The translations under genes were made by a program, and so were the position numbers. DNA of 64,000 nucleotides, from the NCBI RefSeq assembly GCF_006345805.1, contig NW_021833451.1, forward strand, positions 1 through 64,000. The letters run 5' to 3'. How positions within the stretch are numbered: the first letter of the stretch is position 1; each line of letters starts with the position of its first letter. The stretch comes from Octopus sinensis (taxonomy: Eukaryota). Shown here piece after piece: positions 449 through 61,346 of this stretch. The notes below the pieces were generated by a model that was not told the DNA's origin, searched no databases, and was given only the letters and a program-made list of their open reading frames with translations.

Positions 449-1307
449 TTACTTTAACACCGACACAAAATTGCCGGGAAAAAACCCTCTACTGGACTTG
501 ACAGACCCGAACCACCAATTGTCGTCATTTTTGAAGAGAACACAAATAACGTCGCCCTTCCTGAGACTCAACTCGTCCTCCCTCAAGGCCTCATAATCAT
601 AGTCAGCCACGACTAGAGAGTGGAATAATAACATCAACCGATTTCAACGTGCTTTTGATCATCTATACCAGACACAGACATCTTATCATAAAAACTCTAC
701 AAAATAGAGGAAAATGAAAACATGATCAGTGGGTGAGTAGGTGGTCTTCCTCCCACAAAAAGTACTCCGAATGGTGTCGGGGGTGAAACTGCTGGTGGAG
801 GACGGCACCCTTGTGAGACTTGAGTTCTTAAAAAAAGAATTCTCTTGCAACAAATTGAGAGGGTTGTGAATGTACGGGCGAGTAGGAGGGACTGGGATTG
901 GATTGGGGATGTGTTCTTTAAACGAGGTGGACACACCCAATAGACTGTCTTTTGGCATGTGTGAATCTTTATTGCACTTCAAGGTCAATTTCTGTTGTCT
1001 TAAGAAATGAATACTTTGAGCAGTTGGTCAGTGTCTTTTTCGAGCAGGGATACTGCAAATTCCTGAGATTGAAGTTTGTGACTGATTTGTTGGTAGGAAT
1101 GGTTTATTGAGTCGGTCAGATCATAAAGTCCGTTTATGACTGCGTTTTTTGCAGAGGAAACGATGGCTCGAGATGAATTCTACGTTAAATCAATGAGGGG
1201 TCTACAAATTCCAACTCGGATGAGAATCCATCTGCCACTGATCGAAGTGTTTCGGAATTTTTTAGGAAAAAATTTGAAAGTTCAAGTTCGTCTGATTTCT
1301 GAGACAT
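449..1307 (-). CDS. Abl-interactor (ABI)-like adaptor: N-terminal helical region, Pro-rich middle, C-terminal SH3; multi-exon
   Basis: Clear SH3 at 449-637 (ADYDYEALREDELSLRKGD..WW.G..GFFPGNFV) and PxxP tracts. N-terminal LRSVAD and SAKNAVINGLYDLTDSINHSYQQISHKLQSQ match the spacing of ABI LTRVAD and [31 protein letters not shown]. 23-nt GT-AG intron at 992-1014. One homopolymer frameshift near 1265. Confidence 0.65.
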
Positions 1308-1458
1308 GCGAGAATTATAGTTCAAAACACAACAAGAATCGTTATCAAATTATCCGCAACAAAACAAACTATACAATAAAATTAACTCAGATTAAACAAT
1401 AATTTTAGTTATAACATTATCAAAGTTAAAATTATAATCTTAAATTATTTCATATATA

Positions 1459-2664
1459 CAGTCCGACCCCCAAATGGGGCACCAAGTGCCCCAAAATGCG
1501 GGGGTGCCCCAAAAACAGGGGTTTGTTATTTTTTTAAAAATTAAACCATTAATAAACATCAAAAAACATTTTTACTAAAATATTCAGTTATTTTCTTTTT
1601 ATTTGTAGAGTTTTGTCTGATATTGTTCGTCAATTTCAGCCGAAAATCAAAAAAATCTCGGAGCATACTTGGTGCAACATTAGAAATTTTTTCTTCTAAA
1701 TTGTTAAGCAGATCTTTTGTTTTTGCTACGACATTTTCACTATTTTCGGTTTCTGAATATGTATCATAAACATTATTGTTCATGTCTTCGCATTCTCCAT
1801 CAATTGTTTTGTTAACAACTTGATCTAAATGTTCATCTGTTAGACAGTTCTTTCTTTCCCTTGTTTATAACCAAAACACGGTTCGCCTTGTTCAACAAAT
1901 GATTTTTGAGGAGTTCTTTTTATAAAAAGCGCAGTTTCATCACAATTAAATATATTCTCAGGTCCATATTTTAATACTTTCTGGTCATATTTTTCAAAAT
2001 AATTTTTCACATAAGATAAATCACATGAAGCTTTTTCACCACATATTGACTTGAATTGAAGTTCATGCCGCAATTTAAATCTATCAAGCCACCCATTGGA
2101 AGCTTTAAAAGAAGTAAATCCAATTTTTGAAGCTGTAACTAAGGCAATTTTTTTCAAAATAGGGCCTGAAATCGGAATTTTATCTACGCGTAGTCTTTGA
2201 AATATTTCAAAGACTTGATCATCAAATTTATCTTTATCGGCTTTAAATGTGTCATATTCCTCAGAAATAGTATTGCCGTGTTGCAAGAAAGGTACAATAT
2301 TTCGTTTTATTCTTGATATTGTTCCTTTACTTGTGTTGTACTTTTTCATTAGTTGCCTCTCAGATAAATTTTTCTTCAAAATTTCTTTAGCAATCTTCAA
2401 TTTAGTTTCGTAATCCATAACCACAACAATAAAAATATAAATTGAAAATAAAACAAAAAATAATTAATTTATTATAATTTTATTTTATTTTTAATTCCTT
2501 ATAAATGATTTTATGGTGCCCCAAAAATTCCATAATTTTTTATCGATTTTTACTTTTTTTCTGCCAAAATGTACTTTTGGAATAAAGTGCCCCAAATTGC
2601 GGGGGTGCCCCAAAATCCGAGGGTGCCCCACCCCTGGGGTCTGCCCCATTTTGGGGTCGGACTG
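1459..2664 (-). mobile_element. pogo/Tigger (Tc5/CENP-B-like) DNA transposon, internally deleted
   Basis: TIRs CAGTCCGACCCC...GGGGTCGGACTG flanked by TA on both sides. ORF 1840-2424 has HTH-CENPB (FKASNGWLDRFKLRH) and the start of the DDE domain (IFNCDETAL). Confidence 0.9.
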
Positions 2665-3031
2665 TATTTTTCTTTGCCAGACTCAGTCATTTTGTAGAGT
2701 TAGTTAAAACCTCTTTTCCGTAGTCCTTGAAGGGTTTCGTATGAGCCATGCTTAGAGTCATCCTCCCCGCCATCTTGTTTCTGGCCCTCATTCAAACATC
2801 ATTCGGATCTTCCGCCGTCACCAGTTTACCGCCGATTGTTGCGTAATCTTTTCAAAGTATGATGTAAGCATGTTCCTTGGCCGCCCTCGATACTCGTGAC
2901 TTCCGAAGTGGAATTATTAAACTATTATATTGTTACGTAGCGTAATAAGGGTCTATCTAAGATTATGCCTAAATAGTTGTCATCTCAATGAAATAACGTC
3001 CATGCTGATTGATTCGTCCATCCATCTAGAA

Positions 3032-7099: not shown

Positions 7100-10000
7100 T
7101 ATTGTGCTATGTTTTATATTGACGGGAATCATATTCATCTCAATAATGAGCAGGACAAAAATATTTTGATTCAGCAAGGATTGAAATTTCCTGCACCTTT
7201 ATACATATTTTGTGATAAAATTATTAATTATTTATCAATTCACTCTCAGGCACAACCATCTGGTAACAAATACGATTAAAATATTGTTCAGATTTTGATA
7301 AATCACTTTTGATGATATTTCACAACGCCTTAAATGCATTAACGACAAAGGAACACGTTTTGGACGTCTTTAAGGTCATATAATGTTATCACTTTAGGCT
7401 GTTCATTCGATGGCGATTTCCTGTGGAGGAAAATGTCAGTCGTGGGCTGATTTGGTCAAAAATGTTCCGAACTATCAGCTTATCCTCGACGTTTTCAGAA
7501 TTGTTTTTACTTTTTCGAATGAAATGTATTTTTGTTGCATATTGAAGTGCTTTCGAGCAACTCCATTTTTTGTCGTATTTGATTGATGTCTATGACGAGA
7601 ATTATTCCTTTCTCTTCGACGGGCTTGTCCTTTCCGCCTGGTATTACGCGGTAATCAACTTAAGCACTCCACCCATGATCCCCGAATTCTTCAGAATTGT
7701 ACTCCATAGGACATCCGTTCTGTTCTCATCCAAAATAAAGGGATCGTGGATGCCCGACTACTTGGATTTCAGTGGTGGCCTGTCTTTTCTCTTCAACCTA
7801 CTACGGGAGTTGATGGAATGTCACAGAGAGCAATGTGAGCCCGTCCTTCTAGATTTTGTTACTGTATTGCTGCTATATTCACGACAGTCTAGAAGCTCTG
7901 TGGTACTCGACGACTGGATATTACTTGTATATTTATTCTGCAATGGCAACATCAAAGTAGATCAGCAACTTGTCGAGTTCTTGGCCCGAAATTGTATTTT
8001 GTATTATCATTTTCAGTGACAACCTCCCAGATCGAAGGTCTACTTCACATGTTCGGTAGTTGTGACAAATTGAATGTGCATCACGGTTTCCATTTTTAGT
8101 GACGTTGCCCAGATCAGATGGTTCTTTGCTTCTTTATTCACTGCGATTTTGTCCCAACACTTTTGAGTCTCCTTCGGGCGGCCTCCAAACAGTCTTCTCT
8201 GGTCGTCCAATACGCTAATAAACTGTTGGCAAAAATATCGACTGTCCTGTCCAATGCAGTCTTTGTGGGGGACCCCGAGGATCGTTCTTCTGGGACTGAG
8301 GACTGTCACACGGAGCTGGTAGAGGAGCCCCCTCTGTCTCTCGAAGACGGACTGAGAGCCAAGTTTGGTTGTTTTGAGGATAATTTTGACTATTTCCGAA
8401 GTCTTGTTGCTTTTGTTCTTGATTGTGAATGCACGTGAGTTCATTTGTTGACTTTAGAATGTTTGGAGAGTCGCTTCTTCAGTTTTTGTCAGTTTACGGA
8501 CTCAAGTTAAAGGCCGGGCATTGTGGTCATGTTCTAAACTTTGTTTTTGATTCTGTCCATCCCGATAACCTTAATACTTTCACGTTTTTTGTGAGCCTCG
8601 TCGAAAATTGGATTTACCGACATCCGACAGTCCTATCCGAATTTTTCCGAATTCTTTTACGACCAATATCCCCTTCGGTGAAAAGGGGAACATTCTACTC
8701 CAAATTATCCACGTTTTTAAACATGACTTGTCCGTCCTCCATATTCCGGTATTCGATTTTATACAATTCTTAGTATCAACTTGGTGAGGAGTCTGGTCCC
8801 CTATTGGGACGACTTGTTGTCTGCAGTCCTCCAATTGATGGAATATCCCTCCAACATTCGAGACCTATTGAGTGTCCTTGTCCTAGTGGACCACCCTCCT
8901 TCTTTTCCGTTTGTTTCAATAACTCGAATTGCCTGTTACACGGCTAGTTTGTTTGTTCAACTGCTCGCACTTGAATTGGCTGACATTCGTGGTTGTCTTG
9001 TACTTTTTTATTCAGATTTGTCCTCCATTTTGAAAAAGCTGGTCGTCAAGTTCCATTCCCAAGTGGAATTTAGATTTTTACTTTCGCGAGAAATCTTAAA
9101 TCACGTGGTTGCGGGGGACGCCTGTCATTATGTAGACAAGTCTGAGGTGATAAGGGAACTCGATTCCGACATGGTGCACACAATGATTGAACTCATGCCA
9201 GACGATTTGAAGGATTATTTTGATGGGGATGTGGAGATTAACACCTCTCAGTCGACCCACTCTCTGAGAAGATATCTTGTCATTTGGATTTTGTCGATTA
9301 CACTAAAACACGATTCGTCTCCATTTTCCAAATTCTGCAGCAGCAAGACTTTTAGAAACCAACTGGGAACTCATTTTGTGAATTTAGTGAATCAGAGGGT
9401 GGGTTGGGTTATCCACGAGTCACATTTCGAATGGTTGTTTCTGTTATTTGATCATTAGCCAAATCGACGTTTTCAAATTATTTAAGAACAACATTGTAAT
9501 GTGGGATATTGTCTTGTTTCTATGTGCCCCCGGAGGTTGATTACCTGCATTCTGATGGTTGCAGACACATCTGACGACTTGTCTCGTTTGGTCTTTGGAG
9601 TCCTGAATCACCTCAAGAACGACTACTCGGGAAAGAATCCCTCTTGTCGGGCCTCAATGATTCCGTTCTTCCGCGATCCAATTCGTTTCATGCTTAAAGT
9701 GACTGTGTTATCCTCACAGGGTAGAGAATAAGTCGACTCGATCTTGTCTATCCTATATGTGAGATTGTGAGATTGGTTGACTACGTCGATGCTGGCGTTC
9801 TCATGCTAGCCTTGTGGAACTTTTCAGTTTTGTTTCGTGTTTATTTGTAGAGTCGGAAATACTCTGAGTGCCATGAAGACAAATGTTCGTTATAAAAACT
9901 AATGCTGATAGGTTTTTCTCCCGAATTTCGCAAAGTTTTGATGGAGATTTTTAGTCGTAATATAGTCGTCGTCGCTCAATACGTCAAGTATTTTGTTCAT

Positions 10001-14197: not shown

Positions 14198-14954
14198 TTA
14201 AATATAACATCGACGAGCACGATCAAGGGAGAAACGTCGAAGGACATTCCGAACATCGCGAGTAAAGCGAAGGGCGTCAAGGAATGGTAGAACATCCAAT
14301 AAGTGAGTATCGAGGACATCGCCCATCCAAGACTTAATCAAAATCGAGTTTTGAGGGAAGGAATGGTGAATGAACAGGGAATCGTCCAAAATAAAAATAG
14401 AGGACAAGTCATTGCTGATCATACGAATGTCCTTGAATATATTATTCCTCTCCAACGAACAGTGCTGTCATAGAGACAAGGAGATAACCAAACGATGAAA
14501 GACAGAGCAGAAGACGGTCGAGTCCTCATCCAGTAGTTGGACTACTCTCCTAGCATATGCTTCCTGTGCGGCCGTGAAAACAACAACGTTGTACCACCCA
14601 CTGATCTGGCAATTAAAATGGGTCACTAACACATGAAAGGAATTCTTGCACGTGGGGTCGTTTGAGAATGTAAAAGTCTTCGAGTCCGTCCTTCGAGAAG
14701 TTCCTTACTGAGTGAACCAATGTCTCGTCCAAGTCGAGGACAATTGTCTTTCTCCTCACTTCATCTGAGCATGTTAGACATAAAAACAGACACAGCCTGG
14801 ACGTGGAGGATGCACTCAAAGGAGATTCTATATAATTGGGAGCCTGTGGTATAAACCACGTGGATACCTGACCTGGACGAAGTACTTGTGATAAAACAAT
14901 CACCAAAGTACAGAACAAGTCTAAACAACAAGCACAGATACGGCCAAGAGTCAT
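14198..14954 (-). CDS. CTDNEP1: CTD nuclear envelope phosphatase 1 (Dullard), HAD/FCP1 family
   Basis: KTIVLDLDETLVHS, KRPHV, VVFTA and ILDDS..IKSW..D..LL..LPFLDALRFT.DVR.VL. Hydrophobic N-terminus. Introns of 24 nt (14844-14867), 27 nt (14765-14791), 25 nt and 24 nt. Confidence 0.85.
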
Positions 14955-15378: not shown

Positions 15379-17240
15379 TCATGACTTTTCAATCTCATCG
15401 ATGGTCTCAGGTAAATGTCTTTGGTGTGTCTCGGGCAGAAGGAATACCAAAGCACTGCTGAGAAGGCTCAGTATTCCAAAACATGATCTGGCCACCACTT
15501 CCATATTAGTCTACAAATATAAAGCTCACAATACCCCTGTTTGAGAAGCCGCGAGAATGGTTGTTGCCAATACCCCTCCTAGTCCTTCGGCAACTTTGAA
15601 CACCCCGTCGGATATACTCCTGACGTGGCATACCCAACATTACCTAACAGGGGTCGGCATTATTTCCGAGGAAACCAAGCCGATGATCGAGTAGGCTGCA
15701 GTTATCCCAAACTTACCGACTATTGTACTTCCCAGAGCTACGTGTTCAACGTTTTTCCAATTTACTTATAAATTAATTATTACATTTACCGATTTCTGGA
15801 ACCATAAGAGAAGCCAGTATATTACATAAACCAGTGATTAAATAAAGAATTGAAATGGCCCGTCGACCCCCTAATCTGGTGGAATTGCGATTTATATTAT
15901 TTTTAATTAAGCTTCATAATATGAACTTTGAATTAAGTGCCATTGCAAGGATGTATGCGGGGATTTCCACAACCGCGCTGAGAGTCATATTTAAATAAAA
16001 GTTGCCCTTGAAGTTCCCAATAGAATAAGTCAATCCAAAATAGACAATGGCAGTGACCATCCTTATACGTCACAAGTTGAAAGCTAACCATATAAACATC
16101 AAAATAAATGAAAATAGACGCATTTTGGGTGTCCGAAATAAATCAAAATGAGTGTGTTTCCTCGTTGGTGCATTCTGAACAGCTCTTCCAAATCAAGTAG
16201 AGATCTTACAAAGTTTCATCACGACAGAACTCTTCAAAGGGGACACGTCTCTTTCCCGCAGCCTTTAGAATTGTTTTTTTGGCACTTTGATATTTTCTGC
16301 GTGAAATAAGCCACACGACCGATTCAGGCATACCCCTAGATTAATGGAAAAAACAAGAAACCAAATAAACAGAACAGGAATCAGTCCAAATACCCCCAGA
16401 CATACTTGAAAATATATCCAATCGGGGGTCAAATACCCAACTAACACTAAACTCAGCATTCCGACACTCCACAAAGAAACCATTGGAATAAAAGCCTTTG
16501 CTCGTTGGGACCGAGAAAAGGATTCACTGAGGTATATATAGGCCAAATTAGACGACATCTAATGTGATTAGGTTAAATAACTCTATTGGTCATGCCAATA
16601 AAAAATCGAATGGCAATATAACTTTTCAACGAAGAAATGAATATGATTCCAAAGTTGAACACGCTCTGTAGCATTAGAAGGATAATGATTGGCCATTTCC
16701 TTCCATACCAATCACCCAGAGGCATGAAAATAAACCCAACCACAATTGCTCCAGACATGTAAGAGGTGTCGGCCAATTGTAGGAGATAAGCATTTTCGCA
16801 CACGCCATTAAACTATTTTTTAATCAAATAACTTACTTTCGTGGTGAGCGTGGGTTTGTGTGGCGTAGTGAAATCCCACCCCTCAAAACCGCATGGTTGA
16901 GTAGTGTTTGTTTTATTTCCGAAATATACGTATTTTTGACACTTGGAAGGATTTCCCTCCTCATTTAAAGGAATGTATTTTTCGATGGATAAATTTTCTT
17001 AATTTATTAAAATTTAAACGTGCCAGAGAGTTTGCAGTGGTATGACTCTGGGGTACGGCCAATAAAAATTGAACTCAACAAATTCCAGGATCCATTAATG
17101 GTAATAAAAGCGACGATAGAAAAAACAACAAAATGAAAAAATGTATATTTTCTTAGCCAGTCATAAAACTTGGAAATGTCAATTTTTCCTATCTCGTCTG
17201 AGTCGCTGCTGCTTGTTTGAATTGAAATATTTTCAATCAT
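15379..17240 (-). CDS. SLC22 organic cation/anion transporter (MFS), multi-exon
   Basis: YHC in the first loop, F.GVCEN, LGDWYGRK, YIYLSESF, FLLPET..RHLPETIDE then stop. Multiple TM segments and short introns. Confidence 0.88.
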
Positions 17241-21645: not shown

Positions 21646-22513
21646 TTATATAAATTTATAAACAAAGTCTACTCTCATAAAAACAGCAGGAAATTTATTC
21701 CCCTTATTTGAACTGACTTTCTTAGCCTCCTCACTCGAATCAAAAATACAAGAATACGCCTCATCGTTAGCCTTACAGTAAACAAATATCCACCAACCAA
21801 TTCTTCCCCCATCTTTCTGAATAAATGATGACTTGATAACAGATCATTCATCCACTGGTAGAGTTCTTCGACATCCGTGATAGTATAAAGAATTCCCTAC
21901 CACTAAATAACCCATATCTAACCCCCACAGCCATAAGATAGGCCAGGTCGTCCACTGTACTAGAATTAACCAGTCTCCATTTATGCTTTGATTTTTTAAA
22001 CTGAGGGTCTGGAAAGAGGATGAAAACTCGCTCCAACTAAATTAATAGATTTTTATACCCAAAACCTGGCCTTTTGAAAAATAGTTAACTAGATATTTCA
22101 TGGCATTGGTTCTTATGCAGGCAATGTTTGACAATTCTCCTTCCTCTGCTTTCTGGACCCTCAGTGCTTCTATTTTCTGTCTGACAAAAGTTGAAACTTT
22201 TGCGTATTTCCATTCCGATTATTAATTTATCGGGAAAAATATTTGAGAGTTTAACTATTGATTATTTATAAATATATTTATTACAGAGAAGGCCTCCAAA
22301 ACCACAGCCTATGTCTACTATTTTGATTGAACTGCTCTCATTACAAGGTAGAGAGAGAGAACTGTATAGTGGTCTCCAATTCCATTCTGATGGTCTTATC
22401 GGACTATTTTAAGTTAAATGGGTAAAGTACATTTCAAAGTTGTCGTCCGACATTGGATTGCAGTGAGCCCTCTGACGGAAAAATTTTTTTTGAGGAAGTT
22501 TAACGTGGACCAT
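21646..22513 (-). pseudogene. METTL1: METTL1 duplicate; appears frameshifted relative to copy B (could be assembly error)
   Basis: Same exons as 41589-42461, but 2 fewer T in the run near 22197 breaks IRKKVSNFV. Confidence 0.65.
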
Positions 22514-23405: not shown

Positions 23406-23434
23406 CTATTCTAAATTAATTTTCTAATTTTCCA

Positions 23435-30908: not shown

Positions 30909-33740
30909 TTATAAATGGATGTTTATTTTATACATGTGGTTATCCCTACAACCAATATATATAGAATTGCCCGCCCATAGGGGAGTAGAAAAGACTTGTC
31001 CCTCCAACTGAATAGCCCCAAGGACAGTCCCCGAACAAGACTCGACAGCATACACAGTGCCTCCAGTAGACGCCACCACGAACAGGCTGGTCCCGTCCTC
31101 CCTCCACCCGAGGACAGGCGAACTGACCAGAGGCACATTCAAGTGACAGACCCAGTGAAGTGTGCCATCATTGTACAGAGAGTACAAGTTGCCATCATTC
31201 GACCCCACAACCATCCCCTCTGACGTCACCAGAGGTCGTCCAAAGATGGGTCCAGTGGTGGAGTATTGCCAGGGGTGGTCTCCCAGCCGACGAATGGTCC
31301 CATCCACGCCTGCAACGAGGACATGGTTGGAGGACAGGACTGGGGATGAGAAGAGAGGACACCCCACACTAATTTTACTCACAATCCTCCCATTATTCTG
31401 AAATAAAGCACGTGACTGACTTTGTGACAGGAGTAGACGAATCCGGCGAGACAGGAAAAGTAGAGGAGGTGGGCAGTCGAGGTGGGTTGAGAGACGACAC
31501 TCCCCTCGGTTGAGTATGTCCACACACATTTGAGGTCCTGCAGGGATAGACAGTACATGTGTCTGCTGTGTGATCCAATGAAGACGAATGGCCAGTCGAC
31601 TGCGGGAGTACACTTGACAATGGACAGTGTGTCATATTTCCATTTTATTAGTCCATTCTCGATGAAATACACGAAATGGTCGTGGCAGCCAATGACCACC
31701 ACCCCACCCACACAGGCAGGGGATGCCTCCACTCGACCCCCCAACTGCACTCGCCATATTTCACTCCCACACGTGTCCACTCCAAACACCCAGCCAGAAT
31801 GTGAGCCGAACACGACCAGTCCACTAGAAATGACAGACCACGTTACTCGTCGATGACTGCTCCCCCATCCACACACTTGGCTGTGTCAAATCCCCACTCA
31901 ATGGTCATCCCCCCACTCACCACATGTCCTCTCTTACTGCACTGCCTTATCACGTCCCCCACCGAACAGGCCAGAATGGACTCGACGTGGACGACCCCCC
32001 GACCAAACATACTCTCCAGTGCCACCACAATCCTCAGAGCATCGAGGGATGTCGAGGCAAGCAATGAGGAATCAGTCACCTCTCGATTAAGCACGTTCTC
32101 ATACACCTGCCTGACTAATGTGGCCGTGTCCCCCACCAACCCACGTTTGCCTACTTTATATAGACTGACTAACAATGTGGGGACTGGGGGATGTGGCAGA
32201 CTGAGTGCACTCTGTCAGGACGGCAGTGGTTGGGGAGGGACTCGACAACCTCTCTCATGGACACCCCTTCTCTCAACACCACAAAGGCATGGAGGAGTCC
32301 CCCGATCTGGCGGAGGGCAATTCCATCACAGGACTCCCTCAGAAGACACTCCACTCCGTCCAAACACACCCGCACTCCACACCGTTTGATGACTCGGTCA
32401 GTCCTCCCCTGCACATACACCTCCCCCTCCTCCTCCACTCCCATGTCCCCACTATTGTACAACTCCCCTCCTTCCCACCCCAAATATATTCCCCCCTCCT
32501 CCATCACCAACACACGTGATGTCAAACATGCCCCCACTGGAATATCCCCACTCCAATGGCCGGGATTTCGAATATTGTGCTCCACGCTGACACTTCCGTG
32601 ATTCCGTACAAATTGAATATCCGAGTGACATTCCCGGGCTCCCTCACCACCTCCCTCACTCCCGGAGGAGGCTCCCCTCCAAACAGGAGACATTTCAAGG
32701 ACGTGTTCTTCCCCAACAGTGTTCTACTCATTTCCCGCCCTCCAATCACACGGAAATATGTCGGAGTCATCTTTTCTCTCAGCTTACTCCACTACCTGCA
32801 TTATTGACACTTTCGCCTCCAGAAGAACCGGGATTGCGGCTGAAGGTCTCATCAGGAGGTCTCTTCCTACCACCAGAGTGTGACCCCCTCCACTCAGGGC
32901 GCAGAACATGTCCACAATACTCGGGTCAAATGTGAGTGGGGCTGATAGAAGCACCACATCTCCATGTTCAATATTTAATATATTTCTATACAATGTAATA
33001 ATCAACAAACACTATTTAATGTTTATAATTACTAAACAAGTGCAAATATTAATCACTCCCCATCTTAAAAGCAACATTAATTACAACACATTATTCATCA
33101 AGGATACTAAGGACTGCCTATCAAAAAGCGCAGTAAAACACCTATCCTTGTCAGGGGGGTGACATTAAATGACTATACTAGGAGAATGTGTGCGCCTCTC
33201 TATTGACATACACAATGCCGCCATGTCATGTGGCGACTAATTTTTGAGGCCCAAGGCCGCTTACCGAAAATCAAGAATATTGGGCATAATGCAGTCGAAG
33301 GGCACCCTTATTATCTTGGGCTGTGCTGTGGAGCCTGATGTGGTGATAGCATAGGCAATGTCCGCGCTCTGTTTGGTCTGAGTGGAGTGTGGGTAGTGGA
33401 CACAGGAGATGTCAGGGAGGAGACCCAACTCTGTGAGGGCAGTGCAGTCCAATTCATTAAGGAAATATTCCTCGTGAATAAGAATAGTCATTTACAGTTG
33501 AGAACATGTCTTGTGTGATAATAAATCGAATCTCCAGACATTTTAGGACGTATTTTATATACCAGTCTGGCCAGAGTAAGTCGATGGTGACAAAGGGGGA
33601 GGTGGCCGACACTCTGTCAACACTGAGGAGTGGGGATAGCCGATATATATGGCCGGGAGGTGTATACTACGGGATATGCATACTCCTATGTATTCCCCCT
33701 CCCCCGATATTAGATTGATTGCTTTGGATATCTATTCTAT
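30909..33740 (-). CDS. AASDH: Beta-alanine-activating enzyme (ACSF4/NRPS998): adenylation, carrier and PQQ-like beta-propeller domains
   Basis: AYAITTSGSTAQPK, LTFDPSIVD, NLYGITEVSAW, YNSGD, GRTDRVIKRCGVR, STSLDAL, and PQQ repeats (GRVEASP, IGCHD, VKCTP, GPIFGRP, GQVFSTP, IGCRDNHMY). 5' end approximate. Confidence 0.9.
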
Positions 33741-33949
33741 GTGGGTTATATGTTTATACTTGTTTGGATAGAGTATTTAATTCTTGATATGTTAAATATT
33801 CAAAGTTGGAGTCGTTGTAGTATATTATTGCATTCTCCTGACTACTTCCTTTACAGAACGCCACATCAAACAGTCTCATTTAAATATATTTTGAACAATA
33901 ATATTTATTCTTTAATAACATTTAATATTATGAACTACAAAATACTCCA

Positions 33950-34400: not shown

Positions 34401-34429
34401 AACTTAACTTACAGAATGTTGTTTTTAAT

Positions 34430-41588: not shown

Positions 41589-42461
41589 TTATATAAATTT
41601 ATAAACAAAGTCTACTCTCATAAAAACAGCAGGAAATTTATTCCCCTTATTTGAACTGACTTTCTTAGCCTCCTCACTCGAATCAAAAATACAAGAATAC
41701 GCCTCATCGTTAGCCTTACAGTAAACAAATATCCACCAACCAATTCTTCTTCCCCCATCTTTCTGAATAAATGATGACTTGATAACAGATCATTCATCCA
41801 CTGGTAGAGTTCTTCGACATCCGTGATAGTATAAAGAATTCCCTACCACTAAATAACCCATATCTAACCCCCACAGCCATAAGATAGGCCAGTTCGTCCA
41901 CTGTACTAGAATTAACCAGTCTCCATTTATGCTTTGATTTTTTAAACTGAGGGTCTGGAAAGAGGATGAAAACTCGCTCCAACTAAATTAATAGATTTTT
42001 ATACCCAAAACCTGGCCTTTTGAAAAATAGTTAACTAGATATTTCATGGCATTGGTTCTTATGCAGGCAATGTTTGACAATTCTCCTTCCTCTGCTTTCT
42101 GGACCCTCAGTGCTTCTATTTTCTGTCTGACAAAATTTGAAACTTTTTTGCGTATTTCCATTCCGATTATTAATTTATCGGGAAAAATATTTGAGAGTTT
42201 AACTATTGATTATTTATAAATATATTTATTACAGAGAAGGCCTCCAAAACCACAGCCTATGTCTACTATTTTGATTGAACTGCTCTCATTACAAGGTAGA
42301 GAGAGAGAACTGTATAGTGGTCTCCAATTCCATTCTGATGGTCTTATCGGACTATTTTAAGTTAAATGGGTAAAGTACATTTCAAAGTTGTCGTCCGACA
42401 TTGGATTGCAGTGAGCCCTCTGACGGAAAAATTTTTTTTGAGGAAGTTTAACGTGGACCAT
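41589..42461 (-). CDS. METTL1: tRNA (guanine-N7)-methyltransferase catalytic subunit (Trm8/TrmB)
   Basis: [69 protein letters not shown]. 27-nt intron 42352-42378. Confidence 0.93.
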
Positions 42462-42569
42462 CACTAAATAAAATTAAAATATTTTAACAATTAATTTAAA
42501 GAAAATAATATTTTGGTTTAAATTAACCAATTAACCAAGAATTAGAATAGAATAGACTGCCTATCGGGG

Positions 42570-43355: not shown

Positions 43356-43379
43356 TTCTAAATTAATTTTCTAATTTTC

Positions 43380-45050: not shown

Positions 45051-45074
45051 TCAAGCAAACCAATCTTGGTCGAA

Positions 45075-49625: not shown

Positions 49626-49647
49626 ATTTGAATTGGGAAGCAGCGTG

Positions 49648-50085: not shown

Positions 50086-52904
50086 TTAATAATTTAAATC
50101 GTTGCTTAGCTCGCTCATTTGAATAAACATTTGTTCGAACAGTTCATTTAAATAATGTCCACTGACACTGAGTTTGAGGTCTTTAATCATCTACCACTGA
50201 CTTTTATTATTACTTGGTCTATTTTCAACTTTGTATCTTCTAAAACTGCCTTGTCTGTTTGATCTGCAGAATGCAGTATGGTTGCAATTTTTTCCCAAAC
50301 TTCCTCTGTATTCTCAGACTATGGCAAAAAGAATACCTTAATTGGGGAGAGCGACTCCACTTGTCCTGATAAACAGCATACAGTCGTTAGATATAATTCA
50401 ATGTTGCTAATAATAAAAGATGTTTTCTACAATTAACACAACTAGTTACTTCTCGGCCAAATTTTAAAATATTAGAAAGATTTGATAAATTTAATGCAAG
50501 CTTGGAGCCAACAGACCGTGTATATTTGAAGATAAAACTCTCTGGGTTATAATAATACTTGAATACTAATCAAAATAATACATTAATTGCTGCATTCAGT
50601 TTGTAATAGTCGTCGGATAGATTATGGACATAGTGTTCCAATTGGCTTTGTATTAACGTGTAATAGAGCGTTTTCCCCAAAGCCTTTTAATTATAATCAC
50701 AAGAATACTTTTCCCGCCGAAATCAGTCTTTTTGTGTTCACGGAGCACGTGTTTAATATATTTTTCACGTTTACAGTCAAATTGTTTGATAGAGTTGACA
50801 AAAATTCGAATGCTTGGTCTGAAATTTCTTGTATGTGAGCATTCACATTATTCTAGAGCATGTTTTATTCAACTGACCTGAATTTCCCCCATTGATTGCA
50901 CTCTGTCAGGTAGTGCAAGCATGACTATCACGGTGTCAAGAGTATCTCCAATATCCGCCACGGATTCTGCCAGTCGACTGTCCCTCTTGTGGATACAGTC
51001 AGTGTAAACGAAGAATTCTGTCACACGTCTCTTCAAATCTTGCCAGAGCTGCTCAATTTGCTCATTATTTCCTTTCATTGAGTCAAGGAGCTGATAGAGC
51101 CGGTTCAAGAATATAACTCTAAACATGAGAGAGAGAACTGTACATTCCATCAACCAGAACACATCCCCCTCCCGTAGATTCCTCGACCACTAGTCCTTCC
51201 AATCGAATGAAAGAAGAGAGCAAAAAGAACACGAGTGCAACTCCACACTTCCTAATTTTTGACTGGTTCATGTTTGTTGAGAAATGAAATTTTTTTTCAA
51301 ACAGGTTCCCGCTCTTTTTATAAATCGATTGTTAATTGATTCATTTTTTTCAAAAATTGTCCGCATCTTGGCGACATGGCGATGTTCCTCCCCAAAAAAC
51401 GAATTGCAAGATTCTCTGAACGTCGAGTCTGATTCGACGGAAGTCTTAGAAACCCTCACGTTATCGTAAAAATCTTTGATCGATCCATTCTGAGTTGGCA
51501 CAGTATTCCCCAAAGATTGCTGAAGAGAGGAGACAGAATTGAAGATTTTGTAATGTAAATGAGAGTAGTGTCGCAAGAGGAATGAATTCAATTGTCAATT
51601 TCAGTAGTTAAAATGTTGTATTTGGAAGTAAAGTTACGCCCAAAATCGAAAATGAATCGTCCTTTGCCGTATCCCCATTTTTCAACGTTCCCTACCGGCC
51701 AGGCGTGCTTTAAACTTCTTGATTTGACTTTATAAATCAAAATATATTTGGGGGAAATTGAGAGAATGCGAGGAATCAACTTTCCATGTTTCAAATTAAT
51801 TTCCTTAAGTTCACCAATTTGGCCAAACTTGAATGTAAAAAAATGTAGCTCCGAAAAAGGGTTTCCCACAGCATTCTTTTACATAGTCCGACTTGATGAC
51901 ATCTCCAACTGATCCTCGGAACAGTTTGTATTGCTGTAAATAAAAATGCACCAAATTCAACCTCAGCCACTTTACGTTCAATCTTTCTATTTCTTTGATA
52001 TATTTCGGGCAAGTAGTTCTGGAAGCTGCATATGTTAGAAATGAGTCACCACTTTATCGACTTGGCAGAGAAATCACCTACTTCAATTTGGCATTGCATG
52101 GCTGCTAATTTTATGGCCGGTCCAGTATCGATTTGGCAAGTTCCTGAGAGAATTAGTCCAGAAAGCTTAAATAAAAGCAAATAACTACATGTTGGTAGAG
52201 AATATCTAATTCAATGTAATTTCTTGGAATATTCTCGCTTATGTAAAGTCTTCTTTCCAATGTGATGATTTCGTTGGGAGAAATTCCTTGCTCGGGTAAA
52301 CTCAGCCCATTTAGTAGCCAAACCACTGAAATATACGTAAATATTATGCCATTATTGTCAATATGTAATTGGGATATAATTCGGTTAATTTTTTTATTGT
52401 GGTATGTCGGACTAGTTATCGCGGTTTCTCTCCTAAGATAATACTCTTTCCAAACGTGAATTCCTATGAATTAATGACCATCATCAACCGTATAGTTTGC
52501 AAAATATAGGAATTAAATCTCCTACCAGGCGAGAACAATTATATTTGACTGTCCTCAGGATCCCGGTCGATAACTTTATTTTTGCATATTGATGGTTGCA
52601 TTTATATTCAAGGTATTCCTATTCTTTTAATTATTTTATAAACTGTTGGTTTAGTTTGAATATAGTATCCAATCGGTTTATCATTCACCAACCAAATTTC
52701 CTTGTTGAGATCACTGGTCTTCATCATAAGGCTATAGTCTTCTAATTGTTAAAATTGAGACATGCCTTCGTCGAGGACTCTCAATTTTCGCACACTTGCT
52801 CGAAGAATTGCTATTACTTGACGGACTGGCATTTTTAAGTCGACATTGATTCTCTCAACCGAGGCAATTTCGTGAGCAATTACCTTAATCGAAATAACAG
52901 GCAT
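50086..52904 (-). CDS. TLN: Talin-like protein: F0-F3 FERM head plus short helical tail
   Basis: F0 MPVISIKV..DYSL..IWL..K.IGYY; F1 KIKLSTG.LRT; F2 MQCQIE.G, YLPEIY, YVKNA; F3 KLIPRILSIS..W..NVEKW..FIFDFG..Y...TTE. Introns 18-28 nt. At least two homopolymer frameshifts. Stop at 50086-50088. Confidence 0.85.
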
Positions 52905-55451: not shown

Positions 55452-55949
55452 AACTGAATAAAAACTGAGGGCAGCATCCGCTTCTGCATCAGATAGAGAA
55501 GGAATATTGGAGATTTGATATCAAAAGAAAAAAACTTAGACGAGAGAAAACTCACTCATTTCAGATTAAATTTCTAGACGGGAACAAATTTTCGACAAAC
55601 ATACCCGGAGATCGTCTTCAATTGAGAACAACCTGTTTCTGTTTTTTGATTTAATCTCGACTGGACAAGAGAAAGCTTGTTCACACTTATAAAATGTTAA
55701 ATACTAAAGCAATATTTTAATTGATTTTTAAAATTTGAAGGATAAGAATCTTTTATGGAAATATAAAGCATATCTGTCGACAATTCAGCAAAACTGAAAG
55801 AGAAGATCTAAGCTTACAAATTGACACTTCAAAGTTAATTAAAATCTTTTTGGTGAGTCAAAAATAAAGGGTTTCTCGATCTATTTAAGATTTGTCCTAA
55901 CAAAAATTAGAATTGTTGCAATAAAAAAAAGAATAGTTTCAACATACCT

Positions 55950-57140: not shown

Positions 57141-57319
57141 TTTTTAAAGCTATTAGTTTTTATAACCGATATTGCACGAATACATCATTATTTGGGTGTA
57201 AAGACATTTATCAGTTCTAACGATTTTAATTTATTTTTTTCTTTCCCCTAATTTGCACTTTAAATCCCTTTGAAAATATTTTCTCTGTCAGGAAATATTA
57301 GTTATAAAGCATAAGCTCA

Positions 57320-58985: not shown

Positions 58986-59144
58986 AAGAACTTGATTTCG
59001 GATTAATTTGCTGAAATAAGCCGAGAACATTGTGATTTTTTCTATTGGAAAATGCTTGGTTATATTTGTATGTCTGAGAAAAGAGAAAAAAAATTAATAA
59101 ATAAGAGTTCTTTTTTTTAATAAAGTGAATCAATTTATGATAAT

Positions 59145-59815
59145 TATGTATATTTAATTAGCAGCAGAGGATAGGATGGAATGGCAATTCCCACGCAAGA
59201 TGGCTATTTATAGGCGTTGGAAAAGCCATGTCCGTTCCCGATGATCATTTCTTCTTCTGCTTGCCAAATCCGCCAGTTTAATAAGGAATTTTTAGTTCTG
59301 GGGCCGAGGACTCCCGATGTCTCCACTTCGATCGCGGCAAAGATGTGGCGGTGAGATAATGCACTGTATTTCTTGATTTTTAGCGTTTCGGCCAGGTTGG
59401 CTGCGGAGCCCGGCTCTGAAGCCGACGACAAGATGTTCCCGGCGGAAAAGGTATCCGTGCAAGTGGCGTCCCAGATGAGAGACTTGCCATTTTCAAATGG
59501 GAAGGTCGTTAGACCATCAGGACGTTTACCATCCCCCCGAGCCAGCCCGACCGGTTCCAGCTATGAAGGGAATCCGGCAGTTTCCAGAGTCCGCTTGACT
59601 ATGTCGTTCAGAGCCGTATGTCGAGGGAAGCGTCCGGGACTTCTTTGGCACGATAACGGGTGCAATCCAAAGGGGTCAACGGTCGATCCACAGCGACACC
59701 GATGTTCCCGGCATACGTTCAGACCTAGGCGCATTGATATGTCGATCCTCAGGCAATCATCGTCCAATAAGGTTCCAATAGAACCCATTGGGATGGCGGT
59801 CAACCAAGCCCAGGA
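59145..59815 (-). mobile_element. CRE-like 3' fragment, tail-to-tail with the previous element
   Basis: CREHRCRCG, RHTALNDIVKR, WDATCTDTF, KIKKYS. Confidence 0.88.
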
Positions 59816-60251
59816 AAAATTTTAATATGATCAATTATGTTTTATTATGTATAAATGTTGGGGCATATACATTTTTGATGGAAAGCATTGAGTATCAAAT
59901 AATTGTGCGTATCAAATAATTGTGCTATAATAAGTTTAGACACAATATATTGCAAAAAATGAAAGAACAATTCTTTAAATGGGAGTCACATCCTGGAAAA
60001 TTTAAAACAATTTTGTACAGACATGGCATGAATTATCAGAGGAAACAATAGTCTTACTGTTGATTGAAAAAAAACTCGAAGTCCTACCTGACTTGCCAGA
60101 AGAGTCGGTTTAATTACAGCAATACAGGTAGGATAAATGTCGGTGTAGTTGTTTTAAATGGATAAGAAATTAAATATTTGAATAAAACTACATTGGTTCC
60201 ATAATAAAGAGTAAAAATAAGTTAAAAAAAACAGATTACAAAAATGAAAAA

Positions 60252-61346
60252 TCAATGTTCACATTCCTTAGTGAGGCAAAGTTTCGACAATAGCCCTGAA
60301 AGCTGAATTTCCGAGTCGAGTCCTACCGAAGACAGCCTAAGTTGTTGTAATCCAATCTCCTTCATAAACATGACTTGAATTGCCTCCTTCAAACCGGAAT
60401 GTATTTTGCAGACTTTAAACAACATGGATATTATGTCCTGTCCAGAATAGCCCATTTCCAGGAATTTGTAGAGAATCCGTTCAGCCTCGTCTATTCGTCC
60501 AGACACACAGGCATCCAACATTTCCTTGACCAGACTAGGTCGAGGCTCATCACAAATCTGCCATGTCATCACAACACCACCGAAAAGACGTTATCGGCTG
60601 TGACATCGGCCAGACCAATCACGGTAGACTGGAGGTTGTTGATCGCATTCCTCATATCTCCATCCGCACAAAAAACCAGAGCTCGGAGACCTTCCTGGTC
60701 GTAGCAAACCTTTTCCCTTTCTGCCACTCCTTGGACGCATTGATACACCTCATCGTCCAACATTCTGGTAAAGCGGACGATGGCACAACGTGACTGGATT
60801 GGCTCTAATTTAATAATCCTTTCACGCATGCCGATCAGTTTGCTCGAGTCGTTGCAAGCAAAGAAGAACCGAGTGTGGTGTGAGTTTATTTCCATTGTTC
60901 GGCGAAGGGCCTGTTGGGCAGAACTTGTTATACTGTCAGACTCGTCCAGGATTATCATTTTATGTAAGTTTTCTGGTAAATTTACTTTTTTCTGTGCAAA
61001 ATCCTTGATTTTGTTCCTCACAACATCAATCCCTCTAAAAATAAAATACTACAGTACCGTTCATGAGACGCGTTTAATTCAAGGACGGCTTGGCTAAACA
61101 AATCTCCCAGTAACTCCCGAGCCATGCACAAAATGCTTGTTGTCTTTCCTGTCCCCGGAGGTCCCTTTAAAAATTATTGAATATTGCGTATTACAGAAAT
61201 TATAAGGTTTGGAATATTCCCGGATTGAGCAAAATTTTGAAATGATCAATGGCTTCTTTATTACCAATTACATCCTCAAGTTTTTGAGGTCGATACTTCT
61301 CTACCCTTATTCGTAAAAATGGCACCACCAACCATGGGATTTTCAT
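60252..61346 (-). CDS. RFC2: Replication factor C subunit 2
   Basis: [80 protein letters not shown]. Introns of 27, 30, 23, 27 (GC-AG) and 23 nt. One missing T near 61235. Confidence 0.95.

What the first reader, a model, noticed from the sequence alone, without database searches (positions are those of the whole stretch)
449..61346. Animal-type genes spliced by 18-30 nt introns throughout the window
Seen: about 25 introns delimited by restoring conserved protein motifs, e.g. RFC2 27/30/23/27/23 nt, CTDNEP1 24/27/25/24, talin 24/25/27/28/18/24, METTL1 27, ABI 23. TAA/TAG act as stops, so this is not a ciliate code. Known: tiny introns of this size are reported in dicyemids and ciliates, and are too short for canonical simultaneous U1/U2 occupancy. 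Inference: a dicyemid-like parasite with a streamlined spliceosome. If the window comes from a host assembly, it is a cobiont contig.
Basis: partly seen in the sequence, partly recalled or inferred. Interest (0 to 1): 0.7.

Follow-up and report, generated by a model that had tools for sequence, protein, structure and literature searches.

The report
Ultra-short introns in a dicyemid genome

Summary
I modelled nine host genes plus a near-identical second METTL1 copy and found 59 introns (54 unique). Fifty-two of the unique ones are 16-30 nt (median 25). The other two are 51 and 279 nt. All end in AG. Forty-nine start with GT, four with GC and one with CT. In the seven-gene set, 40 of 44 introns would shift the frame or introduce a stop if retained. 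Removing them gives complete ORFs. These match CTDNEP1, METTL1, SLC22, RFC2, the talin head and AASDH across the splice junctions. The "ABI" label is not supported; only an SH3 domain is detectable.

The dicyemid inference is strongly supported, though indirectly. The AASDH locus is 97.5% identical to an unplaced 55.8-kb contig in an Octopus sinensis assembly. NCBI annotates that contig as octopus, yet it carries the same tiny introns. O. sinensis is the published host of Dicyema japonicum. Window GC (37.0%), introns per gene (~6.6) and transposon load match that genome.

A "streamlined spliceosome" cannot be tested in this window and need not be assumed. The phenomenon is already known (2007, 2010, 2019, 2026 papers). 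Minor extras are possible excess GC-AG introns, 16-17-nt extremes, single-base homopolymer frameshifts in the assembly, and cobiont contamination of octopus RefSeq.

The parts
2..381 (+). 3' end of a MYND-zinc-finger gene (partial, runs off the window start)
   Evidence: zf-MYND 1-39/39, E=3e-9; ORF joined by removing 161-186
161..186 (+). intron, 26 nt, GT-AG (MYND gene)
   Evidence: supported by ORF continuity only
449..1307 (-).
   Evidence: complete ATG-TAA ORF after splicing; only SH3 detected; N-terminus has no PDB match
1180..1205 (-). intron 26 nt GT-AG
   Evidence: ORF continuity
   Evidence: ORF continuity
697..721 (-). intron 25 nt GT-AG
613..638 (-). intron 26 nt GT-AG, just upstream of the SH3 domain
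7109..9731 (+). orphan gene, 801 aa, 9 introns
   Evidence: complete ATG-TAA ORF after removing nine 16-29-nt GT-AG segments; no Pfam family; only 2 weak hits among 1.84 billion representative proteins; introns rest on ORF continuity only
7263..7291 (+). intron 29 nt GT-AG
7375..7397 (+). intron 23 nt GT-AG
7526..7547 (+). intron 22 nt GT-AG
7994..8016 (+). intron 23 nt GT-AG
8086..8112 (+). intron 27 nt GT-AG (a 57-nt alternative with an upstream donor is possible)
8435..8457 (+). intron 23 nt GT-AG
8749..8773 (+). intron 25 nt GT-AG
9443..9458 (+). intron 16 nt GT-AG (shortest; least certain)
9536..9564 (+). intron 29 nt GT-AG
14198..14954 (-). CTDNEP1 (Dullard-type NIF phosphatase), 218 aa, 4 introns
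   Evidence: Pfam NIF 1-160/160; PDB 8ujl E=1.5e-42
14844..14867 (-). intron 24 nt GT-AG (in frame, stop-free; lies in a non-conserved N-terminal region)
14765..14791 (-). intron 27 nt GT-AG
   Evidence: gapless PDB alignment across the junction
14606..14630 (-). intron 25 nt GT-AG
14465..14488 (-). intron 24 nt GT-AG
15379..17240 (-). SLC22-type organic-ion transporter, 528 aa, 10 introns
   Evidence: PDB SLC22A3 7zh0 E=2.4e-49, one stretch 96-527; MFS_1 33-346/347
16998..17023 (-). intron 26 nt GC-AG
   Evidence: the neighbouring GT donor gives the wrong frame
16813..16836 (-). intron 24 nt GT-AG
16559..16581 (-). intron 23 nt GT-AG
16336..16361 (-). intron 26 nt GT-AG
16185..16209 (-). intron 25 nt GT-AG
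16062..16088 (-). intron 27 nt GT-AG
15876..15926 (-). intron 51 nt GT-AG
   Evidence: gapless alignment to SLC22A3 favours 51 nt over a 15-nt alternative
15765..15789 (-). intron 25 nt GT-AG (a 52-nt alternative is less likely)
   Evidence: the conserved Trp aligns only with the 25-nt choice
15620..15643 (-). intron 24 nt GT-AG
15511..15534 (-). intron 24 nt GT-AG
21646..22513 (-). METTL1 copy 1 (inside the 4.6-kb duplication); 2-nt deletion in an A-run near 22200
   Evidence: spliced alignment of the copy-2 protein
22404..22430 (-). intron 27 nt GT-AG
22255..22284 (-). intron 30 nt GT-AG
22037..22065 (-). intron 29 nt GT-AG
21897..21922 (-). intron 26 nt GT-AG
21772..21797 (-). intron 26 nt GT-AG
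30909..33879 (-). AASDH / beta-alanine-activating-enzyme-type gene, 843 aa, 8 introns; needs one base added at 32558
   Evidence: Beta-prop_ACSF4 1-329/329 E=3e-76 and AMP-binding 11-377/384; 97.5% identical copy on the octopus-assembly contig
33732..33759 (-). intron 28 nt GT-AG
33623..33639 (-). intron 17 nt; CT-AG in the window, GT-AG in the octopus-assembly copy
33471..33495 (-). intron 25 nt GT-AG
32986..33264 (-). intron 279 nt, GTAAGC...TATAG (the one long intron)
32771..32795 (-). intron 25 nt GT-AG
32154..32173 (-). intron 20 nt GT-AG
31824..31846 (-). intron 23 nt GT-AG
31398..31420 (-). intron 23 nt GT-AG
41589..42461 (-). METTL1 copy 2 (tRNA m7G methyltransferase), 244 aa, 5 introns
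   Evidence: PDB 7u20 E=1e-71; Methyltransf_4 5-172/173 at 163 bits versus 50.7 bits for the best single ORF
42352..42378 (-). intron 27 nt GT-AG
42203..42232 (-). intron 30 nt GT-AG
41983..42011 (-). intron 29 nt GT-AG
41843..41868 (-). intron 26 nt GT-AG
41715..41740 (-). intron 26 nt GT-AG
51588..52904 (-). talin-head gene (F0-F3 FERM), 371 aa to the first stop; the frame probably continues to 51271 after a 1-nt correction near 51591
   Evidence: PDB talin-2 6u4k E=1.5e-27; FERM_f0, FERM_M 11-112/112 and IRS-type PTB
52742..52765 (-). intron 24 nt GC-AG (contains an in-frame TAA)
52619..52643 (-). intron 25 nt GT-AG
52464..52488 (-). intron 25 nt GT-AG
52326..52349 (-). intron 24 nt GC-AG (in frame, stop-free; removal restores colinearity with talin)
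52166..52188 (-). intron 23 nt GT-AG
52026..52052 (-). intron 27 nt GT-AG (a 36-nt alternative donor is possible)
51934..51961 (-). intron 28 nt GT-AG
51804..51828 (-). intron 25 nt GT-AG
60252..61346 (-). RFC2, 321 aa, 5 introns; one base missing in a T-run near 61233
   Evidence: 55-59% identity over 97-100% of the query to animal RFC2; spliced alignment; Rep_fac_C and AAA
61306..61332 (-). intron 27 nt GT-AG
61165..61194 (-). intron 30 nt GT-AG
61035..61057 (-). intron 23 nt GT-AG
60805..60831 (-). intron 27 nt GC-AG (in frame, stop-free; if retained it would insert 9 aa into the conserved KIIEPIQSRC motif)
60558..60580 (-). intron 23 nt GT-AG

Best explanation
The window is nuclear DNA of a dicyemid mesozoan, either Dicyema japonicum or a very close relative, both parasites of Octopus sinensis. 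Its protein-coding genes carry about 5-10 ordinary spliceosomal introns each, and these have been compressed to a narrow 23-27-nt mode (range 16-30). The genes are embedded in transposon-rich DNA. The introns keep only minimal signals: G|GT(A/T) at the 5' end, HAG at the 3' end, an A/T-rich body (68% AT against 56% in exons), and an A-enriched patch 7-9 nt upstream of the AG that is the likely branch site.

Shown here: the boundaries, the length distribution, and the fact that excision is required to read the genes. Excision also restores colinearity with orthologues. In addition, an independent assembly of a closely related genome carries the same introns.

Inferred: that a canonical U2-type spliceosome removes them; that the A-patch is the branch point; and that the uniform length reflects the minimum 5'ss-to-branch-to-3'ss spacing the spliceosome tolerates.
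For: Introns:
- There are 54 unique introns, 52 of them 16-30 nt with median 25. All end in AG; 49 start with GT, 4 with GC and 1 with CT.
- In the seven-gene set, 40 of 44 would shift the frame or introduce a stop if retained (the count is approximate for RFC2, where the missing base shifts the frame used).
- With intron length free between 10 and 300 nt, the spliced aligner still picks 27/30/23/27/23 in RFC2.
- Spliced products give full-length, single-stretch matches: NIF 1-160/160, Methyltransf_4 5-172/173, Beta-prop_ACSF4 1-329/329 and AMP-binding 11-377/384, MFS_1 33-346/347.
- PDB best hits are METTL1 1e-71, CTDNEP1 1.5e-42, SLC22A3 2.4e-49 and talin-2 1.5e-27.

Taxon:
- The AASDH exon hit only XP_029656399.1 from Octopus sinensis.
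- Its contig VCDQ01006929.1 aligns to window 33759-30522 at 97.5% identity and has the same seven tiny introns.
- The MCU gene on that contig also has roughly 23-28-nt introns.
- D. japonicum was collected from O. sinensis. Its genome has GC 36.7%, 48.9% repeats with many LINE ORF2 copies, 6.2 introns per gene and a mean exon of 198 bp (PMC6736024).
- The window has GC 37.04%, about 6.6 introns per gene, a mean exon of 176 bp, and a heavy RT, hAT, pogo and Helitron load.
- The 5'ss reduced to GTa, a bare AG at the 3'ss and weak upstream A residues are what PMC13644364 reports for D. japonicum. The same features appear in the position counts.
Against: - No transcript evidence was available, so splicing itself is inferred.
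- No named dicyemid sequence could be compared directly, so the taxon rests on host association plus genome statistics.
- The best RFC2 matches reach only 55-59% identity and do not resolve the phylum.
- Introns of the orphan gene, the SH3 gene and the MYND gene rest on ORF continuity alone.
- Three or four genes need a 1-nt correction. That points to assembly error, but pseudogenes are also possible.
Confidence: 0.88

Rival explanations
1. The window comes from a myxobolid myxozoan (parasitic cnidarian). Myxobolids are the only other animal group known to have median intron lengths of 22-27 bp.
For: PMC13644364 reports a median of 27 bp in Henneguya salminicola and 22 bp in Thelohanellus and Myxobolus, with similarly reduced splice motifs. 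The H. salminicola assembly was built from PacBio reads polished only with Racon. That would fit the homopolymer frameshifts seen here.
Against: A 97.5%-identical locus sits in an octopus assembly. Myxobolids are not known to me as octopus parasites (my own knowledge). H. salminicola GC is 29.1% against 37.0% here. No myxozoan protein appears among the top 120 RFC2 hits, although T. kitauei is, to my knowledge, annotated in NCBI. The named top hits include many spiralians.
Confidence: 0.03
2. The segments are not introns. They would instead be small insertions, decay in pseudogenes, or assembly artefacts.
For: Four or five segments are in frame and stop-free, so they could be read through. The assembly does contain single-base indel errors.
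Against: Forty of 44 disrupt the frame. All 54 end in AG and 53 begin with GT or GC. Lengths cluster at 23-27 nt, and composition differs from exons. Seven tiny introns are the same in an independent assembly apart from one donor-base substitution and one single-base gap. Excision restores gapless colinearity with orthologues. Essential single-copy genes such as RFC2 would otherwise be destroyed.
Confidence: 0.02
3. The source is another, undescribed tiny-intron animal associated with cephalopods, not a dicyemid.
For: No named dicyemid sequence was compared directly. Only host association and genome statistics link the window to Dicyema.
Against: To my knowledge dicyemids are the dominant metazoan residents of octopus renal sacs. 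They are the only spiralian group reported with such introns; orthonectid introns have a median of 57 bp (PMC6543705). GC, repeat content, intron density and splice logos all match D. japonicum.
Confidence: 0.05
4. The source is a protist with tiny introns, such as a ciliate (for example the chromidinids of cephalopod kidneys) or a chlorarachniophyte nucleomorph.
For: Those lineages have introns of 15-35 nt (PMC2222250; PMC13644364).
Against: TAA and TGA terminate the gene models. No reading frame contains an in-frame stop after splicing. The gene set is animal-type: talin head with an F0 domain, SLC22, AASDH with the ACSF4 beta-propeller, and RFC2 whose best matches are animal proteins.
Confidence: 0.01

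Closest known systems
Ultra-short spliceosomal introns of dicyemids (Dicyema japonicum, D. acuticephalum, Dicyema sp.)
   Same: The length distributions agree: 26.2 +/- 1.9 nt in the first 16 introns described (PMC2222250), and a median of 27 bp with two thirds under 30 bp (PMC6543705). Intron density is about 5-6 per gene in both. The 5'ss is reduced to GTa and the 3'ss to a bare AG, with weak upstream A residues (PMC13644364). Genome GC is about 37% with about half repeats (PMC6736024). The host is Octopus sinensis.
   Different: No essential difference. In this small sample GC-AG donors make up 4 of 54 introns, and two introns are 16-17 nt long. Neither feature is mentioned in the papers I could read.
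Ultra-short introns of myxobolid myxozoans (Henneguya salminicola, Thelohanellus kitauei, Myxobolus spp.)
   Same: The same length class (median 22-27 bp), reduced splice motifs and a parasitic lifestyle. The published interpretation is canonical U2-dependent splicing (PMC13644364).
   Different: A different phylum (Cnidaria), reached by convergence. To my knowledge the hosts are fish and annelids. H. salminicola GC is 29%. There is no link to octopus assemblies.
Tiny introns of ciliates (Paramecium about 25 nt, Stentor 15-16 nt) and chlorarachniophyte nucleomorphs (18-21 nt)
   Same: The length class and GT-AG termini. They show that a spliceosome can remove introns this short.
   Different: These are protists, many with reassigned stop codons, and they lack animal-type genes such as talin, SLC22 and AASDH.
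Short introns of orthonectids (Intoshia linei)
   Same: A reduced spiralian parasite with a similar intron density.
   Different: The median intron is 57 bp and most are longer than 30 bp (PMC6543705).

Membership tests
Spliceosomal (U2-type) introns | GT (rarely GC) at the 5' end and AG at the 3' end | tested here: met
   49 GT, 4 GC and 1 CT among 54 unique introns; all 54 end in AG. The CT donor is GT in the octopus-assembly copy.
Spliceosomal (U2-type) introns | Excision is needed for, and restores, the reading frame and colinearity with orthologues | tested here: met
   40 of 44 disrupt the frame. There are full-profile Pfam matches and gapless PDB alignments across the junctions.
Spliceosomal (U2-type) introns | A branch-point adenosine upstream of the 3' splice site | tested here: inconclusive
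   A is enriched at positions -9 to -7 (20, 17 and 20 of 42, against about 12 expected). No branch-site consensus is visible.
Spliceosomal (U2-type) introns | A polypyrimidine tract | tested here: not met
   There is no C/T tract. The 3' region is A/T-rich and only position -3 avoids G. The same is reported for D. japonicum.
Spliceosomal (U2-type) introns | Absence of the segment from mature mRNA | not testable with these tools
   No transcript data were available.
Dicyemid genome (Dicyema japonicum type) | Intron length mode about 23-27 nt, with most introns under 30 nt | tested here: met
   52 of 54 are 30 nt or shorter, median 25. Published values are 26.2 nt and a median of 27 bp.
Dicyemid genome (Dicyema japonicum type) | Genome statistics: GC about 36.7%, about 49% repeats with many LINE ORF2 copies, about 6 introns per gene | tested here: met
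   GC 37.04%, 6.6 introns per gene, and host genes span only about 21% of the window. Multiple RT, hAT, pogo and Helitron fragments are present.
Dicyemid genome (Dicyema japonicum type) | Association with a cephalopod host | tested here: met
   A 97.5%-identical locus lies on O. sinensis assembly contig VCDQ01006929.1. O. sinensis is the host of D. japonicum.
Dicyemid genome (Dicyema japonicum type) | Direct sequence identity to a named dicyemid assembly or transcriptome | not testable with these tools
   RDEW01 and GHAB01 are not in any searchable collection. An exact look-up of the 448-aa window ORF found nothing.
Myxobolid myxozoan genome | Closest relatives are myxozoan or cnidarian proteins | tested here: not met
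   No myxozoan appears among the top 120 RFC2 hits. The only near-identical protein in 5.8 billion is annotated as Octopus sinensis.
Ciliate-type tiny introns | Ciliate gene content and, in many lineages, reassigned stop codons | tested here: not met
   TAA and TGA terminate the models. The gene set is animal-type.
   Only SH3 is detected by Pfam. The N-terminal 195 aa have no significant PDB match, although to my knowledge ABI-containing WAVE complexes are in the PDB.
Talin | An F0-F1-F2-F3 FERM head | tested here: met
   Talin-2 head 6u4k residues 5-389, E=1.5e-27; FERM_f0, FERM_M and IRS-type PTB.
Talin | A helical-bundle rod and a C-terminal I/LWEQ actin-binding domain | tested here: not met
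   No rod or I/LWEQ match was found in the roughly 110 aa that follow the head. Further downstream the sequence has no such match either.

The most novel reading that the evidence does not exclude
5' splice-site recognition in this lineage may be unusually relaxed, and the whole tiny intron may be under selection. Three observations point this way. GC-AG donors with a GCAYR motif make up about 7% of introns (4 of 54), against roughly 1% in other animals by my own knowledge. Apparently functional introns go down to 16-17 nt, below the 20-27-nt length classes for which PMC13644364 built logos. Tiny introns are at least as conserved as exons between two related genomes (1 of 160 positions differ, against 38 of 2396). 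If these hold genome-wide, they would constrain models of how a spliceosome handles introns shorter than its own footprint.
Probability: 0.2. Interest if true: 0.45.

Novelty: already known. Interest (0 to 1): 0.25.

Why it matters
The main point is quality control and orientation. The window is a typical piece of a dicyemid genome, and its most striking feature has been in the literature since 2007. It was re-analysed at genome scale in 2019 and 2026.

Two practical consequences follow.

1. Standard gene finders and NCBI's pipeline mis-model such loci. The RefSeq protein XP_029656399.1 "from Octopus sinensis" is a mis-spliced dicyemid AASDH. Octopus gene sets therefore contain cobiont genes.

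2. Any annotation or read mapping of this material must allow introns down to about 15 nt and must tolerate single-base homopolymer errors.

If the small-sample hints hold genome-wide (excess GC-AG donors, 16-17-nt introns, strong conservation of the tiny introns), they would add detail to the open question of how introns shorter than the spliceosome's footprint are recognised.

Tried and rejected
- An ab initio dynamic programme that minimised the number of excisions was too permissive to fix exact boundaries. I used it only for the shuffle control and for the orphan gene.
- The spliced aligner run against the divergent talin-2 head produced spurious frameshifts and a 10-nt and a 58-nt "intron". 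I replaced these by inspection guided by the PDB alignment, and the Pfam FERM_M score improved from 23 to 46 bits.
- An exact look-up of the 448-aa transposase ORF found no record.
- Rfam and tRNA scans found nothing, so no snRNA inventory is possible.
- The N-terminus of the "ABI" gene has no support from PDB or Pfam.
- The exhaustive representative search with the largest exon of the orphan gene gave only two weak, repetitive hits.
- The kinase-like region at 48880-49750 has only a weak Pkinase match (E=0.005) and apparent frame disruptions. I could not model it and excluded it.
- I considered a U12-type reading of the 17-nt AASDH intron (GTATCC... in the octopus copy) and dropped it as unsupported.
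- I skipped an RFC2 tree. All hits are 55-59% identical, so it would not resolve a long branch.

Full report
**What the window is.** The 64-kb window is AT-rich eukaryotic DNA with 37.04% GC. It has no tRNA or Rfam match. Six-frame translation shows short ORFs belonging to animal-type genes. Between them lie many transposon fragments:
- Tc5/pogo transposase
- hAT-like proteins with a Spin-doc zinc finger
- non-LTR reverse transcriptases
- a Pif1/Helitron piece
- a retroviral-type integrase

**Checking the observation.** I wrote a protein-to-genome spliced aligner. It scores BLOSUM62 matches, allows any GT/GC..AG segment of 10-300 nt as an intron, and permits frameshifts at a cost. Against three animal RFC2 proteins obtained it returned the same five introns each time: 27, 30, 23, 27 (GC-AG) and 23 nt. 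It also returned one single-base frameshift in a T-run near 61233. The spliced RFC2 aligns over 97-100% of its length at 55-59% identity to animal RFC2.

Reading the sequence reproduced the CTDNEP1 introns of 24/27/25/24 nt. The spliced protein matches Pfam NIF 1-160/160 in one stretch. It also matches human CTDNEP1 (PDB 8ujl, E=1.5e-42) without gaps across the junctions.

METTL1 has five introns (27/30/29/26/26), not one. The spliced protein matches human METTL1 (7u20, E=1e-71). It scores 163 bits on Methyltransf_4 (positions 5-172 of 173), against 50.7 bits for the best single ORF.

The talin gene is a talin head. Talin-2 6u4k matches at E=1.5e-27 over residues 5-389, and Pfam finds FERM_f0, FERM_M 11-112/112 and an IRS-type PTB domain. 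It has eight introns, 24/25/25/24/23/27/28/25, of which two are GC-AG.

The "ABI" gene gives a clean 252-aa ORF after four excisions (26/23/25/26). Only its SH3 domain is recognisable, and the N-terminal 195 aa have no significant PDB match. The name is therefore unverified.

**Further genes.** Four more genes carry tiny introns.
- An SLC22-type transporter at 15379-17240 has ten introns: nine of 23-27 nt and one of 51 nt. It matches SLC22A3 (7zh0) at E=2.4e-49 in one stretch.
- An AASDH / beta-alanine-activating-enzyme-type gene at 30909-33879 has eight introns: 28, 17, 25, 279, 25, 20, 23 and 23 nt. The spliced product gives Beta-prop_ACSF4 1-329/329 (E=3e-76) and AMP-binding 11-377/384.
- An 801-aa orphan gene on the + strand at 7109-9731 opens from ATG to TAA after nine excisions of 16-29 nt. 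It has no detectable homologue.
- The 3' end of a MYND-finger gene has a 26-nt intron at 161-186.

A second METTL1 copy lies inside a 4.6-kb duplication at 99.3% identity. It has the same five introns.

**Statistics.**
- There are 59 introns, 54 of them unique. Fifty-two are 16-30 nt, with median 25 and most at 23-27 nt.
- All end in AG. Forty-nine start with GT and four with GC, the GC donors all reading GCAYR. One starts with CT.
- In the seven-gene set, 40 of 44 introns have a length that is not a multiple of three or contain an in-frame stop.
- The 5' site reads G(-1)|GT(A/T). The 3' site is HAG. There is no polypyrimidine tract.
- A is enriched at positions -9 to -7.
- Introns are 68% AT and exons 56% AT.
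- As a chance control, I counted the minimum number of 15-40-nt GT/GC..AG excisions needed to read an open frame across each locus. Real genes need 2-10. Shuffled versions need a mean of 6.7-18.9, and 30-80% of shuffles have no solution. Four of five antisense strands have no solution.
- Models end in TAA or TGA, consistent with the standard genetic code.

**Which organism.** A 2026 paper shows that introns under 30 bp occur in two animal lineages, myxobolid myxozoans and Dicyema japonicum (PMC13644364).

The decisive lead came from the last homologue search. The C-terminal AASDH exon matched only one protein among 5.8 billion, and the match was 100% identical over the shared part. That protein is XP_029656399.1, "beta-alanine-activating enzyme-like [Octopus sinensis]".

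It is encoded on the unplaced 55.8-kb contig VCDQ01006929.1 of assembly GCA_006345805.1. That contig aligns to window 33759-30522 at 97.5% identity. It carries the same seven tiny introns, differing only by one donor-base substitution and one single-base gap. The MCU gene on the same contig also has roughly 23-28-nt introns. The octopus assembly therefore contains a cobiont contig of the same or a closely related organism. NCBI's gene model for it is mis-spliced, as the sequence shows.

D. japonicum was collected from O. sinensis. Its published genome statistics are GC 36.7%, 48.9% repeats with many LINE ORF2 copies, 6.2 introns per gene and a mean exon of 198 bp. These fit the window: GC 37.0%, 6.6 introns per gene, a mean exon of 176 bp, and host genes spanning only about 21% of the sequence.

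Henneguya salminicola has 29% GC. No myxozoan appears among the RFC2 hits. I therefore put a dicyemid origin at about 0.9. Direct identity to a named dicyemid sequence could not be tested.

**Mechanism.** The anatomy is that of ordinary U2-type introns reduced to minimal signals. This is exactly what is published for D. japonicum: a GTa 5' site, a bare AG, and weak upstream A residues. The tight length distribution suggests that the introns sit at the shortest spacing the spliceosome can handle.

Canonical U2 snRNA and U2AF are reported in myxobolids with equally short introns, and that paper cites similar support for a functional spliceosome in Stentor, whose introns are 15-16 nt.

**Assembly quality.** RFC2 (near 61233), talin (near 51591) and AASDH (32558) each need one extra base in a homopolymer run. 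At 32558 the octopus contig has the extra A. METTL1 copy 1 lacks 2 nt in an A-run. RFC2 is, by general knowledge, an essential gene. I therefore read these as residual long-read indel errors rather than pseudogenes. Some intron lengths may consequently be off by one base.

**Comparison with the octopus contig.** Substitutions are 0.6% in tiny introns (1 of 160, and that one is the donor base), 1.6% in exons, 2.5% in the long intron and 3.6% in the flanks. There are 18 synonymous and 20 non-synonymous differences. The sample is small and the octopus contig carries many single-base deletions. This is a hint that the tiny introns are constrained, not a result.

**Verdict.** The dicyemid reading is strongly supported. 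The feature is already known (PMC2222250 in 2007; Ogino et al. 2010, cited in PMC6543705; PMC6543705 and PMC6736024 in 2019; PMC13644364 in 2026). Interest is low to moderate.

Noticed in passing
L001 (GCA_006345805.1 contig VCDQ01006929.1, record 16940-39507); window 30522-33759: RefSeq protein XP_029656399.1, 'beta-alanine-activating enzyme-like [Octopus sinensis]', is encoded on a contig 97.5% identical to the window. The contig has the same tiny introns, and the NCBI model skips exons. The octopus assembly and gene set therefore contain dicyemid-type cobiont sequence.
   Followed up: yes
window ~61233 (RFC2), ~51591 (talin), 32558 (AASDH), ~22200 (METTL1 copy 1): Single-base (2-base in METTL1 copy 1) deletions in homopolymer runs break otherwise intact reading frames. 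At 32558 the octopus contig has the missing A. These look like residual long-read assembly errors, so intron lengths may be off by one base.
   Followed up: partly
window 33623-33639: The 17-nt AASDH intron begins with CT in the window but GT in the octopus-assembly copy (GTATCCCCACTCCTCAG). This is either a base error or polymorphism, or a dead donor in this allele.
   Followed up: partly
window 60805-60831, 52742-52765, 52326-52349, 16998-17023: Four of 54 unique introns use GC-AG, all starting GCAYR after an exonic G. That is about 7%, well above the roughly 1% I recall for other animals. Two of the four are in frame and stop-free, so they are less certain.
   Followed up: partly
window 20687-25319 and 40630-45274 (also 19718-20696 and 25318-26293): A 4.6-kb segmental duplication at 99.3% identity carries a whole METTL1 gene plus a non-LTR retrotransposon. 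Copy 1 differs by a 2-nt deletion, an in-frame GAA deletion and two amino-acid changes.
   Followed up: partly
window 10724-11434: A 96-bp satellite, 7.4 copies, 95% matches, preceded by a (TGTC)n microsatellite at 10662-10700.
   Followed up: no
window 51271-52904: The talin gene seems to encode only the FERM head (F0-F3) plus about 110 residues. No rod or I/LWEQ domain is detectable downstream. It is either a head-only talin or a gene truncated by transposon insertions.
   Followed up: partly
window 48880-49750 (- strand): A protein-kinase-like remnant with a weak Pkinase match (E=0.005). It shows apparent frame disruptions around the catalytic-loop motif. It could be a pseudokinase, a pseudogene or more assembly error, and I could not model it.
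   Followed up: partly
window 7109-9731 (+ strand): An 801-aa orphan protein with nine tiny introns. It has no Pfam family and essentially no homologue among 1.84 billion representative proteins.
   Followed up: partly
window 30909-33879 versus L001: Tiny introns differ at 1 of 160 aligned positions between the two genomes. Exons differ at 1.6%, the long intron at 2.5% and flanks at 3.6%. This hints that whole tiny introns are constrained, but the sample is small.
   Followed up: partly
window 1843-2463, 3283-4170, 4328-4975, 5381-6454, 12771-13244, 22598-25400, 28380-30233, 36033-38388, 39389-40788, 42546-47700, 54271-55520, 57274-58912: There is a dense transposon load: Tc5/pogo, hAT-like with a Spin-doc zinc finger, non-LTR reverse transcriptases, a Pif1/Helitron fragment and an integrase. 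Modelled host genes span only about 21% of the window. Some of these ranges are labelled from reading the ORF translations, not from a Pfam hit.
   Followed up: partly
L001 2900-3750: The MCU (mitochondrial calcium uniporter) gene on the octopus-assembly contig also appears to be split by introns of about 23-28 nt. No counterpart was found in the window.
   Followed up: partly
window 62034-62732 (+ strand): An intron-less 232-aa ORF with a hydrophobic C-terminal stretch and no family match. It may be a lineage-specific membrane protein.
   Followed up: no
window 30000-34000: The AASDH locus is markedly GC-richer (43-46%) than the rest of the window (32-40%), although it has the same intron architecture.
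   Followed up: no
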